DNA from: Asterias rubens
Lineage: Eukaryota
Length of the DNA: 64,000 nucleotides
Direction of reading: 5' to 3'
Assembly: GCF_902459465.1 (NCBI RefSeq)
Contig: NC_047065.1
Coordinates: 372,001-436,000 of the forward strand
Below, piece by piece: positions 60,846-64,000 of the stretch (its first letter is position 1; each line of letters begins with the position of its first letter). A program made the position numbers and the translations under genes. The notes beneath the pieces are model-generated. The model did not search any database. It was given only the letters and a program-made list of their open reading frames with translations, and had not been told where the DNA came from.

Positions 60846-63105
60846 GAGGCATGATTACAACTTGTACAGTTTGTATTTCACGAATATTTTATGCAAAGTG
60901 TCGGCACTGCTTCTGTTAGAGACCGAACTTTGATTGGTTATCAAAGACGAGTAGTGTCTGTCTGTATATGGTTACCATGGCATTGTGTGAGATAATTATC
61001 AACACGTTTCATAGCTCAATGCATTTTTCCCCTTCATCTTGGAAGACGATCCGTCATCAGTACTCTGTACTTTAAGCTTTTATCGCTAAGAGGATCCGCG
61101 TATAGACAGGGGAAACTCAATTGTGCATTGTAATTGAACAATTTAAGATGCTGTAACAAACAATCACAATGTACTGAACGAACAATAACCTCACAGGAAT
61201 CCATATATGAATGGATGGAGCTGGGGAACGAACACTGGTTATCAAGTTTGATCCGGCGCAAATACAAAACAAAATGGAGATTTTCTTTTCACTTACACGC
61301 AATGACTAATCATCAATTCCCTTCAGACCGACTTCAAACCATAAACTGAATAACATGAGTTTCGCAGATAAATTGTTGTTGAACACAAAACGGCTGAGAT
61401 TTTCTTCAATATTTCACCCTGTTTTTTTTATATTAATCCTCACACACTAAGACGAGCATAGACCACTTTTGATTGTATCGCGAGGTCTCGCGAGTACGTG
61501 ACAGAGTTTTAAGACGGACTGGTGTGACGTCATCAAGTCCCACTTGAGCGCATAAGTCTCGTAATCGTTTTAAAAGGACAAACGTATTTCTCAAAAGTGA
61601 ATCGAGTGGGGAAGAAGATATTGTGAGTTAGATATTGTGGCTCGAGGCACATTTCAAAAAATCAAGGAACAGCTCGTATACACAACGCAAGAATTCAGCA
61701 AAAAAAACCTCAAACCAACTCAAAAAAGGGAAAAAACTAGAGCAGATACGGTAAGATAACTTTAGCAAAGGAAATAGTTTGTGAATAGTTCACTTTTAAA
61801 CTTATAAGTTAGATACGCATGCTTGAGCCATAGAGCAAGGCACGGCTTGAGCTAAGAAGCCAGTAACTTCCTTTTTATACAGTGATAAGAGAATGTAAGA
61901 TTGATAATCAAGACATTCTTGTACGAATCATTATAATTGATAGAGTTCTTAAATTGTTCTTAATTGAAAGAGTTCTTAAAAATCTCCCTAAAGTATTTTT
62001 TGTTTTAGTTTTCCCCTTTTTCTAAGAGTAAGTCGAAGACGAATATTATTCAATACATTGAGAAGACATGTCTGTATAATTTGAAAGTGTTTTTTTGCAA
62101 TTTTGGCGGGAAAACTGACGATTCGCACTCTGCACGGTGTTACACCGTTAAGGCTTACAACTTCAAGTGGGGGATTAGTGTGACTTATTCACTAATTAAA
62201 CGTTCATTAAAGTGTCATTTTAATTGACAATTTCAAGGACGTTTTTCAGTTAAGTCTCTTATTTATTCCTGAATATTACAAGACGTGGTTCCGCTTCAGT
62301 GGTTATTTATCTTAAGTGTATTTCAGCAGGAGACGTCAGTTTACAGTTTAAGTCATGGAATTTAGTCACAATCGAACTTTAGAAATGACTACTAAGCAAA
62401 GTGCAGAATCTCACTTGATGGTACCCTTATGGCCCAATTTCATAAAAAACGTTAAGCGTAAATGGTGCTTAGCAGAAATAAACAGGGTAGCATTTATTAA
62501 CAGGAAACATTTATATTTTAACCGTAACCTGATTGGACTCTGAAAACTTCCACAAAGGTTGAATCAAACGAGTAATTAGTCAACGGAAACAAACGAGAAA
62601 GTGAGTGGAACTACACAAAATAGAAATGTTTTGTATCTAGAAGGACCGTCTGTTGAAAATTCACGCTGATTCTTGTCGACTGTTGTAGACGAAACTCACG
62701 TAAAGTGCACGCAGTTCGGGTTCCCAGACACCCTATAGTCATTGTAACGGGATCAATAAACTTCGACATCATTTTCGACAACCGCGAAACGCGTAAAGTG
62801 ACGACGCACGCCGTATGACAAAATCTTGAGTCTTTTGTTAACGCAAATTATCGCCTGATTTCACAGCATTAGGATTTACAGCATGGTTCATCTGAATCAA
62901 ACTGCACAACGTGTAATGGTACACTACTTTAAGAATCATGAGGGGGTGGGTCGTATAAGAACTTACACAAGCAAACTAAACAACAACCAACATTGCAGGG
63001 ATACCACTTTACAAACTAGACTTAAACAAATTCATTCATTGTTTTAGAATGATCCTTTGGATGTCGAAGTTTGTAGGGTTTGAAACTTGACAAGGTGGAA
63101 ATACG

Positions 63106-63359
63106 ATATGGAAAGGTCTGCGGTAACACCGTGTATAAATCTCTAATGAGTTGGGGTGGTTCTTAAAAGAGCCGTGTGTTTTAACTCGACGTTTCGATCA
63201 GTATGCTCTGATCGTCTTCAGAAGAGAAGCCAGCTTTCTACTGAAGACGAACAGAGCATATTGATCGAAACGTTGGGTTTAAACCAACGGTTCTTTTCAG
63301 AACCACCCCAACTCATTAGAGATAGTCATTACATAGTGTTACCGCAAACCTTTCTATAT
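63106..63359. mobile_element. 254-bp palindromic element built from two inverted Penelope-like hammerhead-bearing arms
   Basis: Arms ~63106-63221 and 63241-63359 are imperfect inverted repeats around a 19-nt spacer. Confidence 0.8.
63185..63224 (-). ncRNA. Putative minimal type-I hammerhead ribozyme motif (Penelope-associated variant)
   Basis: The minus strand reads cuu-CUGAAGA-c-GAUCAG-agcaua-CUGAUC-GAA-ACGU-C/gag: conserved core, perfect 6-bp stem II, palindromic ACGU stem III, 3-bp stem I. Activity untested. Confidence 0.6.
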
Positions 63360-64000
63360 GTTGAAGTATGTTTGTTTTTCCATGTCATCTGTCATGACCA
63401 AAATTTATTCTGAAAAGAAAATCTGAAAACATTTTTCCCCGCAAAAATTGAGCAAGACATCTTTAATGCGCTGGATTTCAGCATGACTGGTAACTTGTTG
63501 CATAGATTGAAGAGAAGCAATGTTGATATGGACTATGATGAATACAAGTTGCATTTTAATCACACTTGTTAGATGATCATTATGAGTTGCCATGTCATCA
63601 CAACATACGGCTTTATTGTTACCTGACTTTTTCAGTGAATGCCTTAACATGATGAAGCCAGGTTCATTTAATACCACGAAGGGGGTGGGGCAGCAATGAA
63701 TGCCTTTATACATCATCAACCATAGCTCGTCTCATGACGTGAAAAGTACATCAAACCTCAGGTGTATTTGCCTTTCTAATTTGACTGACAGAACCGTAGG
63801 ATATTGGTCGCTCTCCGTTCTGTACACACACATACAGGCGTTGTTAAAACACCTAAGGCTATATTATAGCTTTTTGATAGAAGCATAACGTTGAGATTTC
63901 CATATCAGTTTTTGTTAATAGGTGGTGTGGTGTTTCCAGACTCGATTTACTTTTGTTATTATAGGTCAACCTTTATTGCTGCACCTGTAATATGTGTTAG

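What the first reader, a model, noticed from the sequence alone, without database searches (positions are those of the whole stretch)
63106..63359. Palindromic MITE-like element carrying a Penelope-type minimal hammerhead ribozyme motif on each strand
Seen: minus strand 63224->63185 reads CUU CUGAAGA C GAUCAG AGCAUA CUGAUC GAA ACGU C/GAG. That is the CUGAnGA and GAAA core, a perfect 6-bp stem II (one extra C before it), a GUC cleavage triplet (cut between 63188 and 63187) and a 3-bp stem I (C-G, U-A, U.G). A decayed copy sits on the plus strand at 63241-63277 (mismatch in stem II, no stem I). The whole region folds back as ~116-bp arms around 19 nt, possibly TA-flanked. Established: Penelope-like retroelements carry minimal type-I hammerheads whose stem III is a short palindrome and which cleave as dimers. 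Inference: this is a non-autonomous element made from two inverted ribozyme-bearing repeats. A read-through transcript would pair each ribozyme with its own antisense, so it could be self-silencing or switchable. It could also be a TIR-mobilised carrier of retroelement ribozymes.
Basis: partly seen in the sequence, partly recalled or inferred. Interest (0 to 1): 0.75.

Follow-up and report, generated by a model that had tools for sequence, protein, structure and literature searches.

The report
Inverted pair of Penelope retrotransposon ends
The palindrome is not a MITE but one old insertion of a sea-star Penelope-like retrotransposon, laid down as two truncated end pieces joined head to head, each with the element's usual mini hammerhead ribozyme motif; this is a known kind of structure.

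Summary
It is the only hit of a Penelope-type minimal-hammerhead descriptor in the window, against 0 hits in 200 shuffles.

The 254-bp palindrome is not a TIR element. It is one old insertion (window about 63072-63359, target duplication of 8-10 bp) of a Penelope-like retrotransposon (PLE) of a sea star. Two 5'-truncated copies of the element's last ~125 nt are joined 5'-to-5'. One copy carries the optional 35-nt PLE 'tail'.

Longer copies lead into an RT + GIY-YIG ORF that is 95% identical to Asterias amurensis proteins. Inverted pairs, one-sided tails, variable target duplications and hammerheads in the terminal repeat are all published PLE traits.

The genome holds at least 1,300 such arms. 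Most are single; roughly 10-15% sit in inverted pairs.

The window copy keeps the ancestral CUGAAGA core. The youngest, most abundant lineage has CAGAAGA (U4 to A).

Each arm also carries a histone-mRNA-type stem-loop and an HDE-like box. I found no paper describing this pairing. This scan has already noted the same family and the same pairing many times elsewhere in this genome.

No RNA data could be obtained, so cleavage is untested.

The parts
63061..63070 (.). Left copy of the target-site duplication (ATGTCGAAGT)
   Evidence: a 10-mer with 1 mismatch to 63358-63367. 19 other full copies show 8-15-bp duplications at the same two borders.
63072..63105 (-). PLE 'tail': the optional ~35-nt 3' extension of the left (inverted) copy. 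It holds the remnant of the ORF start (family CCACC-ATG; here ATG has become TTG at 63093-63091).
   Evidence: It is shared on one side only by 19 of 20 full copies. In the family consensus it reads MQSFKSY, compared with MQTFKHHL at the N-terminus of a sea-urchin PLE protein. A tail of 30-40 bp at one end is described in PMC8557442 and PMC11167929.
63106..63225 (-). Left arm: a 5'-truncated PLE terminal region in antisense orientation
   Evidence: aligns to positions 597-719 of a long copy at 88%.
63185..63224 (-). Minimal type-I hammerhead motif with an intact core (CUGAAGA, bulged C, 6-bp helix II, GAA, ACGU, C17). Helix I is CUU/GAG. The predicted cut lies between 63188 and 63187.
   Evidence: Read. 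It is the only descriptor hit in the window, against 0 in 200 shuffles.
63134..63178 (-). Decayed histone-type stem-loop (stem 63158-63173, one C.A mismatch) plus an HDE-like AGAGAU (63144-63139)
   Evidence: Rfam RF00032 scores 24.7 bits, below the gathering score of 34.
63226..63229 (.). Junction or filler between the two 5' ends
   Evidence: Centres differ in length and sequence among copies.
63230..63359 (+). Right arm: a 5'-truncated PLE terminal region in sense orientation, ending at the tail-less RT start (..CTATAT)
   Evidence: aligns to positions 590-719 of a long copy at 89%.
63241..63274 (+). Decayed hammerhead motif (core CUGAAGA kept, A.A mismatch in helix II, GUU, no helix I)
   Evidence: Read. 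It is not a descriptor hit.
63284..63329 (+). Histone 3' stem-loop-like element (stem-loop 63289-63304) with an HDE-like AGAGAT at 63318-63323
   Evidence: Rfam RF00032 scores 35.7 bits against a gathering score of 34. Host histone genes have the same stem-loop flanks and AAGAGAT 14-16 nt after the stem; here the distance is 13 nt.
63332..63350 (+). Block next to the RT start site (family CATGGTGTTACCGCAAACC)
   Evidence: It is 100% identical over 19-20 nt in a PLE that is only 61% identical in protein (L104).
63358..63367 (.). Right copy of the target-site duplication (ATGTTGAAGT). Its first 2 nt overlap the element's end.

Best explanation
The palindrome is a single, old, dead insertion of a Penelope-like retrotransposon (PLE) in a sea-star genome.

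Mechanism. The PLE protein (RT + GIY-YIG nuclease) nicked both target strands 8-10 bp apart. Each 3'-OH primed reverse transcription at one of two adjacent internal start sites on PLE RNA. One start includes the 35-nt 'tail' and the other does not. Both cDNAs ran only ~125 nt, to the region just 5' of the hammerhead. That point is probably the 5' end of the RNA. The two cDNAs were then joined 5'-to-5' with a few filler bases.

Result. The product is tail + antisense arm + centre + sense arm, flanked by a target duplication. Each arm necessarily carries the element's minimal type-I hammerhead, a histone-like stem-loop and the RT-start block, which gives one ribozyme motif on each strand.

Shown: the anatomy, the target duplications, the one-sided tail, the variable centres, the same-subfamily arms, and the link to the RT + GIY-YIG ORF.

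Inferred: priming on both strands (from published in vitro work), an RNA 5' end just upstream of the hammerhead, and any ribozyme activity.
For: Family and borders. The genome holds at least 2,474 first-look candidates, and the 40 scored places are all full-length at 83-88% identity. 19 of 20 full copies share a 35-nt extension on one side only and have target duplications of 8-15 bp.

Most members are single arms. Most places that hold the 34-mer are single arms with their own duplications.

Link to a PLE ORF. Longer copies continue 5' through ~520 nt into an ORF end, GVYRIPCECGKVYVGETGR. This is GIY-YIG by Pfam at 25.6 bits against a cut-off of 22.6. A 533-aa frame has RVT_1 at 40.7 bits plus GIY-YIG. 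Its best relatives are Asterias amurensis proteins at 95%, then other echinoderms, then Anolis at 41%.

Arms made together. In all 24 pairs in which both arms could be typed (the window's own left arm is too decayed), the two arms belong to the same subfamily, including one rare mosaic type present in both arms. Centres and inner ends differ between copies. All 5 close pairs in the first 100 rows are in (-,+) order, that is, with 3' ends outward.

Published PLE traits. An inverted 5'-truncated copy and a 30-40-bp tail at one end are described in PMC8557442. Nicking and extension of both strands, and two internal RT start sites that bracket the tail, are described in PMC11167929. Dual min-HHRs 100-700 bp apart on opposite strands are described in PMC4209133.

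The hammerhead. The descriptor finds 1 hit in the window against 0 in 200 shuffles. It finds 25 unique hits beside PLE ORFs in 80 metagenome loci against 0 in 20 shuffles. All 25 have the 1-nt bulge. Helix I, which is not part of the descriptor, is at least 3 bp in 80% of them against 3% in slid controls. They carry 22 different stem II sequences.
Against: No PLE ORF lies in the window, so the link rests on other copies.

Priming on both strands is taken from in vitro work on an Anolis PLE, not shown here.

Many pairs have arms of nearly the same length. That could also fit a palindromic unit copied as a whole.

Rfam's hammerhead models give no hit on the window even at E<=10. However, they also miss six clear PLE min-HHRs used as a control.

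The family majority has CAGAAGA, not CUGAAGA, so ribozyme function is doubtful for most copies.

No RNA data were available.
Confidence: 0.85

Rival explanations
1. It is a dedicated non-autonomous palindromic retroposon. A master copy containing both arms is transcribed as a hairpin RNA and is reverse-transcribed as one unit by the PLE machinery.
For: At least 20 copies have similar total length, and the whole unit is flanked by target duplications. The arms are concordant in subfamily, which a master copy would also produce.
Against: The centre and the inner ends of the arms differ from copy to copy, with fillers of 1-54 nt and different truncation points. Pairs occur in both contemporaneous PLE subfamilies and in a mosaic type. 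Single arms outnumber pairs by roughly 6-9 to 1. An RT would have to copy through a perfect hairpin of ~115 bp.
Confidence: 0.08
2. It is two independent PLE fragments that landed next to each other in opposite orientation, for example because the element targets itself.
For: The Anolis PLE protein is reported to cut within its own terminal repeat (PMC11167929).
Against: The duplications flank the pair, not each arm. The orientation is always 3' ends outward. The arms are always of one subfamily, and in young copies they diverge from each other by only 0.9%.
Confidence: 0.03
3. It is a MITE, that is, a DNA element moved through its terminal inverted repeats by a transposase and carrying captured ribozymes.
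For: It has long inverted arms and terminal ATAT on both sides.
Against: Target duplications vary in length from 8 to 15 bp. There is an asymmetric 35-nt tail. Truncated single-arm copies have their own duplications. The arms are continuous with a retrotransposon ORF.
Confidence: 0.01

Closest known systems
Penelope-like elements with a C-terminal GIY-YIG nuclease (Penelope/Poseidon-type; e.g. Poseidon 'PAc' of Anolis carolinensis, PMC11167929; structures reviewed in PMC8557442)
   Same: One ORF with RT followed by GIY-YIG. Heavy 5' truncation. An inverted 5'-truncated copy joined to a sense copy. A 30-40-bp tail at one end only. Variable target duplications. A hammerhead in the terminal repeat close to the ORF start. 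RT start sites close to the ORF start.
   Different: The host is a sea star. The RT start sites lie about 12 nt before and 22 nt after the ATG, rather than ~111-118 nt inside the ORF. A histone-type stem-loop plus an HDE-like box sits between the hammerhead and the ATG. The youngest lineage has A at core position 4.
Minimal hammerhead ribozymes of metazoan PLEs (Cervera & de la Pena 2014, PMC4209133)
   Same: Type I. No helix III loop, only the palindrome ACGU, so activity is expected only as a dimer. An unpaired base between A9 and G10.1. G10.1-C11.1. A 6-bp helix II. A 3-bp helix I. Occurrence as two motifs on opposite strands ~100 bp apart.
   Different: Cleavage was not tested here. Most copies of this family carry CAGAAGA. 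The window copy has the canonical core but is a dead fragment.
Twin-priming inversions of LINE-1
   Same: Both target strands prime reverse transcription in one event, which gives an inverted 5' part joined to a sense 3' part inside one target duplication.
   Different: In L1 the second primer anneals at a random internal site, so the two parts are different segments. Here both cDNAs start at defined neighbouring sites and copy the same ~125 nt, which gives a true palindrome.
Animal non-LTR retrozymes (tandem HHR repeats giving circular RNAs; bioRxiv 10.64898/2026.07.22.740005 links them to PLE terminal repeats)
   Same: Short non-coding DNA that carries PLE-type hammerheads and derives from PLE terminal sequence.
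   Different: Retrozymes are head-to-tail tandems. This is a head-to-head pair, which cannot yield unit-length RNA through two cuts on one strand.
Replication-dependent histone mRNA 3' end signal (Rfam RF00032 plus the U7-binding HDE)
   Same: A 6-bp stem of form GGYYYU/ARRRCC, a UUUC loop, an ACCC tail, a CCAAC 5' flank, and AGAGAU 13 nt downstream. This resembles the host's own histone genes.
   Different: It does not follow a histone gene. The third pair is U-A where the host has an invariant C-G. Inserted copies run 55-90 nt past the predicted cut, so the RNA templates were not cut there. A PLE relative (L104, 61% identical in protein to database PLE protein P0004) keeps the hairpin core but not the GG/CC base and does not score as a histone stem-loop.

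Membership tests
Penelope-like element (EN+ PLE) | Single ORF with a reverse transcriptase followed by a C-terminal GIY-YIG nuclease | tested here: met
   Met in longer copies of the same family, not in the window. RVT_1 scores 40.7 bits and GIY-YIG 23.6-25.6 bits. The arm is continuous with the ORF end. The window holds no ORF.
Penelope-like element (EN+ PLE) | An inverted 5'-truncated copy joined to a sense copy, forming inverted repeats | tested here: met
   Window arms are 63106-63225 (-) and 63230-63359 (+). At least 25 further pairs were seen. Described in PMC8557442.
Penelope-like element (EN+ PLE) | [quoted passage not shown] | tested here: met
   A 35-nt extension on one side is present in 19 of 20 full copies and in the window at 63072-63105.
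Penelope-like element (EN+ PLE) | Partial tandem arrangement that forms pseudo-LTRs around a full ORF | tested here: inconclusive
   The longest copy held (L101) shows only the downstream terminal region within 6 kb. No further genome DNA could be fetched.
PLE minimal hammerhead (min-HHR) | Catalytic core CUGANGA ... GAAA with the cleavage site UH | tested here: met
   Met in the window's left arm at 63221-63188. Across the family it is met in the older lineages. The diverged lineage, with 657 anchored copies, has the consensus CUGAAGA..GAAACGUU. It is not met in the young majority, which reads CAGAAGA: about 22 exact CUG 34-mers against about 650 exact CAG.
PLE minimal hammerhead (min-HHR) | An unpaired nucleotide between A9 and 10.1, a G10.1-C11.1 pair, a long helix II, and a palindrome at 15.2-16.2 without a helix III loop | tested here: met
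   C bulge, GAUCAG/CUGAUC, ACGU. The same traits occur in 25 of 25 (bulge), 17 of 25 (G-C) and 16 of 25 (ACGU) PLE-linked motifs from metagenome loci. The traits are listed in PMC4209133.
PLE minimal hammerhead (min-HHR) | Self-cleavage, as a dimer or with protein help | not testable with these tools
   There were no RNA reads. The only indirect hint is that 5 of 100 copies anchored on the stem-loop begin at the first base after GUC, against about 0.3 per position nearby. I read this by eye.
Rfam Hammerhead_1 (RF00163) and other Rfam hammerhead models | Score at or near the family's gathering score | tested here: not met
   No hit at E<=10 on 291 nt or on 16 family copies. The control shows that these models also miss six canonical PLE min-HHRs, so this failure says little.
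MITE / TIR DNA transposon | Terminal inverted repeats bounded by a fixed-length target duplication, with symmetric ends | tested here: not met
   The duplications are 8-15 bp and vary. One end carries 35 extra nt. Single-arm copies are common.
Histone 3' UTR stem-loop (RF00032) | Sequence and structure score at the gathering score, with a purine-rich downstream element at the host's spacing | tested here: met
   The right arm scores 35.7 bits against 34. Consensus-like copies score 33-36 bits. AGAGAT lies 13 nt after the stem, against 14-16 nt in 12 host histone stem-loop signals. The left arm scores 24.7 bits and is decayed.
Histone 3' UTR stem-loop (RF00032) | Lies after a histone ORF and directs U7/SLBP-dependent cleavage | tested here: not met
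   It follows no histone gene. It lies ~45 nt before the PLE start codon. Inserted copies extend past the predicted cut. Cleavage itself could not be tested.
Non-LTR retrozyme | Head-to-tail tandem repeats, each with a hammerhead | tested here: not met
   The two motifs lie on opposite strands, 5'-to-5'.

The most novel reading that the evidence does not exclude
This sea-star PLE lineage has placed a working mimic of the histone pre-mRNA end signal (a stem-loop for SLBP plus a U7-binding box) between its hammerhead and its start codon. It would use the mimic to give its mRNA a histone-type 3' end, or S-phase-coupled stability and translation, while read-through RNAs serve as templates. In parallel, the youngest lineage, which is also the most prolific, spread after losing the canonical U4 of the hammerhead. 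That would make it a natural case showing that ribozyme catalysis is not needed for PLE retrotransposition.
Probability: 0.2. Interest if true: 0.7.

Novelty: new member of a known kind. Interest (0 to 1): 0.3.

Why it matters
As found, this is a clear example of how PLE insertions can be mistaken for MITEs. A perfect-looking 250-bp palindrome with a ribozyme on each strand is simply the scar of reverse transcription primed on both strands. This matters for repeat annotation in echinoderm genomes.

Three side results could make open questions about PLEs testable:
- Copy 5' ends pile up just upstream of the hammerhead, with a smaller pile at the predicted cleavage site. These could locate the RNA 5' end and give genomic evidence for cleavage in vivo.
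- A young lineage of more than a thousand copies has a mutated core (U4 to A). This bears on whether catalysis is needed for transposition.
- The histone-type end signal suggests a link between a retrotransposon and the SLBP/U7 pathway. I found no description of such a link.

Tried and rejected
Rfam hammerhead models. They gave no hit on the window or on family copies. I rejected this as evidence against a hammerhead, because the same models miss six clear PLE min-HHRs. A genome-wide RF00163 search scored only 73 of 47,731 candidates and says nothing.

More genome DNA. As a result, the other PLE families of this genome (about 55% protein identity) and an unbiased set of diverged copies could not be read. 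I used pattern searches that print the matched letters instead.

A histone stem-loop as a general PLE feature: rejected. A strict descriptor found none next to the 25 hammerheads in 80 metagenome PLE loci. The closest relative held (L104) does not score as a histone stem-loop.

A host-specific covariance model of the histone stem-loop was not built. The host stem-loop is invariant, so such a model would only measure identity.

The test of whether the two arms of a pair are each other's closest relative was uninformative. Arms of one subfamily are nearly identical across copies. Subfamily concordance was used instead.

Reading the element as a SINE with a 5' head was my own first idea. I dropped it when the ragged end turned out to continue into the PLE 3' UTR and ORF.

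Full report
OBSERVATION

On the minus strand, 63224->63185 reads CUU CUGAAGA C GAUCAG AGCAUA CUGAUC GAA ACGU C GAG. On the plus strand, 63241-63274 is a decayed copy. The repeat finder gives arms 63139-63225 / 63237-63323 at 89% complementarity and outer arms 63106-63135 / 63330-63359 at 87%. As RNA the region folds into one long hairpin at -176 kcal/mol, z = -22.

I wrote a descriptor for the published minimal hammerhead: CUGANGA, 0-1 unpaired base, helix II of 4-9 bp closed by G-C, a loop of 3-8 nt, GAA, a self-complementary A..U stretch, then H. It finds exactly one hit in the 64 kb, which is this one, and none in 200 dinucleotide-preserving shuffles.

WHAT THE PALINDROME IS

The 254-mer is a high-copy repeat. 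There are at least 2,474 first-look candidates, and the 40 scored places are all full-length at 83-88% identity.

An alignment of 20 copies with their flanks showed three features that a TIR element would not have:
- About 35 nt of shared sequence continue beyond the palindrome on one side only.
- The whole unit is bounded by target duplications of variable length, 8-15 bp. In the window these are ATGTCGAAGT at 63061-63070 and ATGTTGAAGT at 63358-63367.
- The centre between the arms differs in length and sequence from copy to copy.

I then sampled places by the 34-nt ribozyme motif alone. Most of them turned out to be single arms, with or without the 35-nt extension, and each has its own target duplication.

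The ragged end of these single arms lies on the ribozyme side. In some copies that end continues into further shared sequence. Following it in longer copies runs through ~520 nt of non-coding sequence into the end of an ORF reading GVYRIPCECGKVYVGETGR.... Pfam calls this GIY-YIG. The longest frame held, 533 aa, has RVT_1 plus GIY-YIG. Its best database relatives are uncharacterised proteins of Asterias amurensis at 95%, then Patiria, sea urchins and a crinoid, and Anolis at 41%.

The genome (417.6 Mb) is therefore that of a sea star. The arms are the terminal ~125 nt of a Penelope-like element (PLE), read on the strand of the right arm.

The 35-nt extension is the PLE 'tail'. In the family consensus it contains CCACC-ATG and reads MQSFKSY. 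The N-terminus of a sea-urchin PLE protein reads MQTFKHHL. Copies therefore end either ~12 nt before or ~22 nt after the start codon.

FIT TO PUBLISHED PLE BIOLOGY

Craig et al. 2021 (PMC8557442) describe heavy 5' truncation, an inverted 5'-truncated copy adjacent to the sense copy, and a 30-40-bp tail that is often present at one end only.

Frangieh et al. 2024 (PMC11167929) show that an Anolis PLE protein nicks and extends both target strands. They also show that reverse transcription starts at two adjacent internal sites, and that the sequence between those sites is the tail.

Cervera & de la Pena 2014 (PMC4209133) found minimal hammerheads in PLE terminal repeats, including pairs 100-700 bp apart on opposite strands.

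The window element is exactly such a pair. The left arm, 63106-63225 (-), carries the tail at 63072-63105. A 4-nt junction follows. The right arm is 63230-63359 (+).

THE TWO ARMS WERE MADE TOGETHER

- The duplications flank the pair, not each arm.
- All five close pairs in the first 100 rows have 3' ends outward.
- In all 24 pairs in which both arms could be typed (the window's own left arm is too decayed), the two arms belong to the same subfamily. One pair has a rare mosaic type in both arms.
- Inner ends and fillers differ between pairs. This argues for formation at each insertion rather than copying of a palindromic master.
- The two arms of the window copy differ by 17%, so it is an old insertion. 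Each arm has decayed on its own.

THE HAMMERHEAD

All traits that Cervera & de la Pena list as not imposed by their search are present here: the unpaired base between A9 and 10.1 (C), G10.1-C11.1, a long helix II (6 bp), and the palindrome ACGU in place of helix III.

As an independent comparison I fetched 80 PLE loci from metagenome contigs using an alignment of PLE proteins. The descriptor finds 25 distinct motifs there, just before or just after the ORFs, against none in 20 shuffles. All 25 have the one-base bulge, although the descriptor also allowed none. They carry 22 different helix II sequences. ACGU occurs in 16 of them. Helix I, which is not part of the descriptor, is at least 3 bp in 80% of them, against 3% when the 3' strand is slid.

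The closest relative held is L104 (its PLE protein is 61% identical to database PLE protein P0004). It has the homologous motif with two changed pairs in helix II and a 5-bp helix I.

The window motif is a member of this class by architecture and by position. Rfam's hammerhead models do not see it. They also fail on six clear PLE min-HHRs, so this is a blind spot of the models.

CORE POSITION 4 ACROSS THE FAMILY

Across the family the picture is mixed. The exact 34-mer with CUGAAGA occurs 22 times. The version with CAGAAGA (A at core position 4) occurs roughly 650 times exactly and about 1,230 times within one mismatch (the split was estimated from the listed rows).

Copies with U4 are on average more diverged. 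A diverged lineage was anchored on its own downstream sequence, which makes it unbiased for the ribozyme. It has 657 matches against 24 for the control pattern, and its consensus is CUGAAGA...GAAACGUU. U4 is therefore ancestral.

The A4 form marks the young lineages. These include copies that are 97-100% identical over the adjacent 79 nt. From general knowledge of the hammerhead core (my own recollection, not checked here), U4 is one of the conserved core bases and its replacement strongly lowers cleavage. This agrees with the report that core mutants did not affect insertion in vitro.

The window copy has U4 in both arms. It belongs to an older A/B-like sublineage.

WHERE THE COPIES BEGIN

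Among arms that contain the motif, 32 of 44 begin within -10..+5 of core base C3.

In 100 copies anchored on the stem-loop, which is unbiased for the ribozyme, I read the rows by eye:
- About 58 begin at -10..+5.
- About 13 run further upstream.
- 8 begin at +6..+32, about 0.3 per position.
- 5 begin at +33/+34, the first base after GUC.
- 3 begin at +35/+36.

I read the large pile as the 5' end of the RNA, that is, a start-site cluster in the terminal repeat. Most copies would then be full copies of the short leader between the RNA start and the first RT start site. I read the small pile as a hint that some templates had been cut by the ribozyme. An RT pause at the edge of the folded motif is the alternative. 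Both readings are inferences.

THE HISTONE-LIKE SIGNAL

Rfam's Histone3 model hits the right arm at 35.7 bits (gathering score 34) and the decayed left arm at 24.7 bits. Consensus-like copies score 33-36 bits.

Twelve stem-loop signals beside host histone genes (11 distinct sequences) have an invariant CGGCUCUUUUCAGAGCCAC and AAAAAGAGAU 14-16 nt after the stem. The element has AACGGUUCUUUUCAGAACCACCCC and AGAGAU 13 nt after the stem.

The signal lies ~20 nt after the ribozyme cut site and ~45 nt before the start codon. Inserted copies run 55-90 nt past the predicted histone-type cut, so the templates were not cut there.

It is not a general PLE feature. None was found next to the 25 hammerheads in the metagenome loci. 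L104 keeps the hairpin core GUUCUUUUCAGAAC but not the G-C base pairs, and it does not score as a histone stem-loop.

I found no paper that links PLEs with the histone end signal (no mention in PMC8557442).

After reaching this point I looked up the scan's own notes. The same family and the same hammerhead-plus-histone-signal pairing have been reported many times from other parts of this genome. This is not a first sighting within the scan.

LIMITS

No RNA reads were available. Cleavage, SLBP/U7 use and the RNA start are all untested.

VERDICT

The Penelope-hammerhead reading is right. The MITE or TIR-carrier reading is wrong. The structure is a known kind, a PLE inverted pair, seen here in a new host and family. 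The unusual part, the histone-type signal, belongs to the family rather than to this palindrome and has already been flagged elsewhere in the scan.

Noticed in passing
family-wide; window 63221-63215 (-) and 63241-63247 (+): Core position 4 of the hammerhead is U in the window copy and in older or diverged lineages. It is A (CAGAAGA) in the young, most abundant lineages: about 1,230 arms within one mismatch, against about 90 for the U form. The change also turns UCUCCUG|A into UCUCCAG|A, which looks like a 3' splice acceptor. In Drosophila virilis Penelope an intron is reported to end at the 5' edge of helix I (PMC4209133). I did not test for splicing.
   Followed up: partly
family-wide (rows, e.g. 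G000:C1:11113614, C1:23829504, C1:25456034): The 5' ends of copies pile up within ~10 nt upstream of the hammerhead core. A smaller pile lies exactly at the first base after the GUC cleavage site: 5 of 100 copies, against about 0.3 per neighbouring position. This was read by eye from printed matches.
   Followed up: partly
window 63284-63329 (+), 63134-63178 (-): A histone-mRNA-type stem-loop and an HDE-like AGAGAU lie between the hammerhead and the PLE start codon. Rfam scores the right arm above its gathering score. I found no such pairing in the literature, but other reports of this scan have noted it repeatedly in this genome.
   Followed up: partly
window 63332-63350; L104:5766-5785 and L104:668-687: The 19-20-nt block CATGGTGTTACCGCAAACC, just before the RT start site, is 100% identical in L104, a PLE whose protein is only 61% identical to database PLE protein P0004. 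It is a candidate recognition site for the reverse transcriptase. L104 itself carries an inverted second copy of the block upstream, so it shows the same inverted architecture.
   Followed up: partly
L016, L019, L020 centres; rows C1:302995, C1:4984094, C1:5015649, C1:32195571: In a subset of copies the arm stops 3-4 nt inside the core and abuts an A-rich (AAAAG)n-like tract. This occurs both in single arms and in the centres of pairs. It could be a microsatellite target, since PLEs are reported to favour microsatellites, or it could be untemplated or switched synthesis. It is unexplained.
   Followed up: no
L044 (G000:C15:7920363-7921196): A complex young copy has three hammerhead-bearing segments: an inverted pair plus a 53-nt internal duplication of the ribozyme region.
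   Followed up: no
L022-L033 (histone loci of the same genome): The host histone stem-loop CGGCUCUUUUCAGAGCCAC is invariant in 11 distinct sequences. The downstream element has the consensus AAAAAGAGAU. This is useful for predicting the 5' end of this species' U7 snRNA.
   Followed up: no
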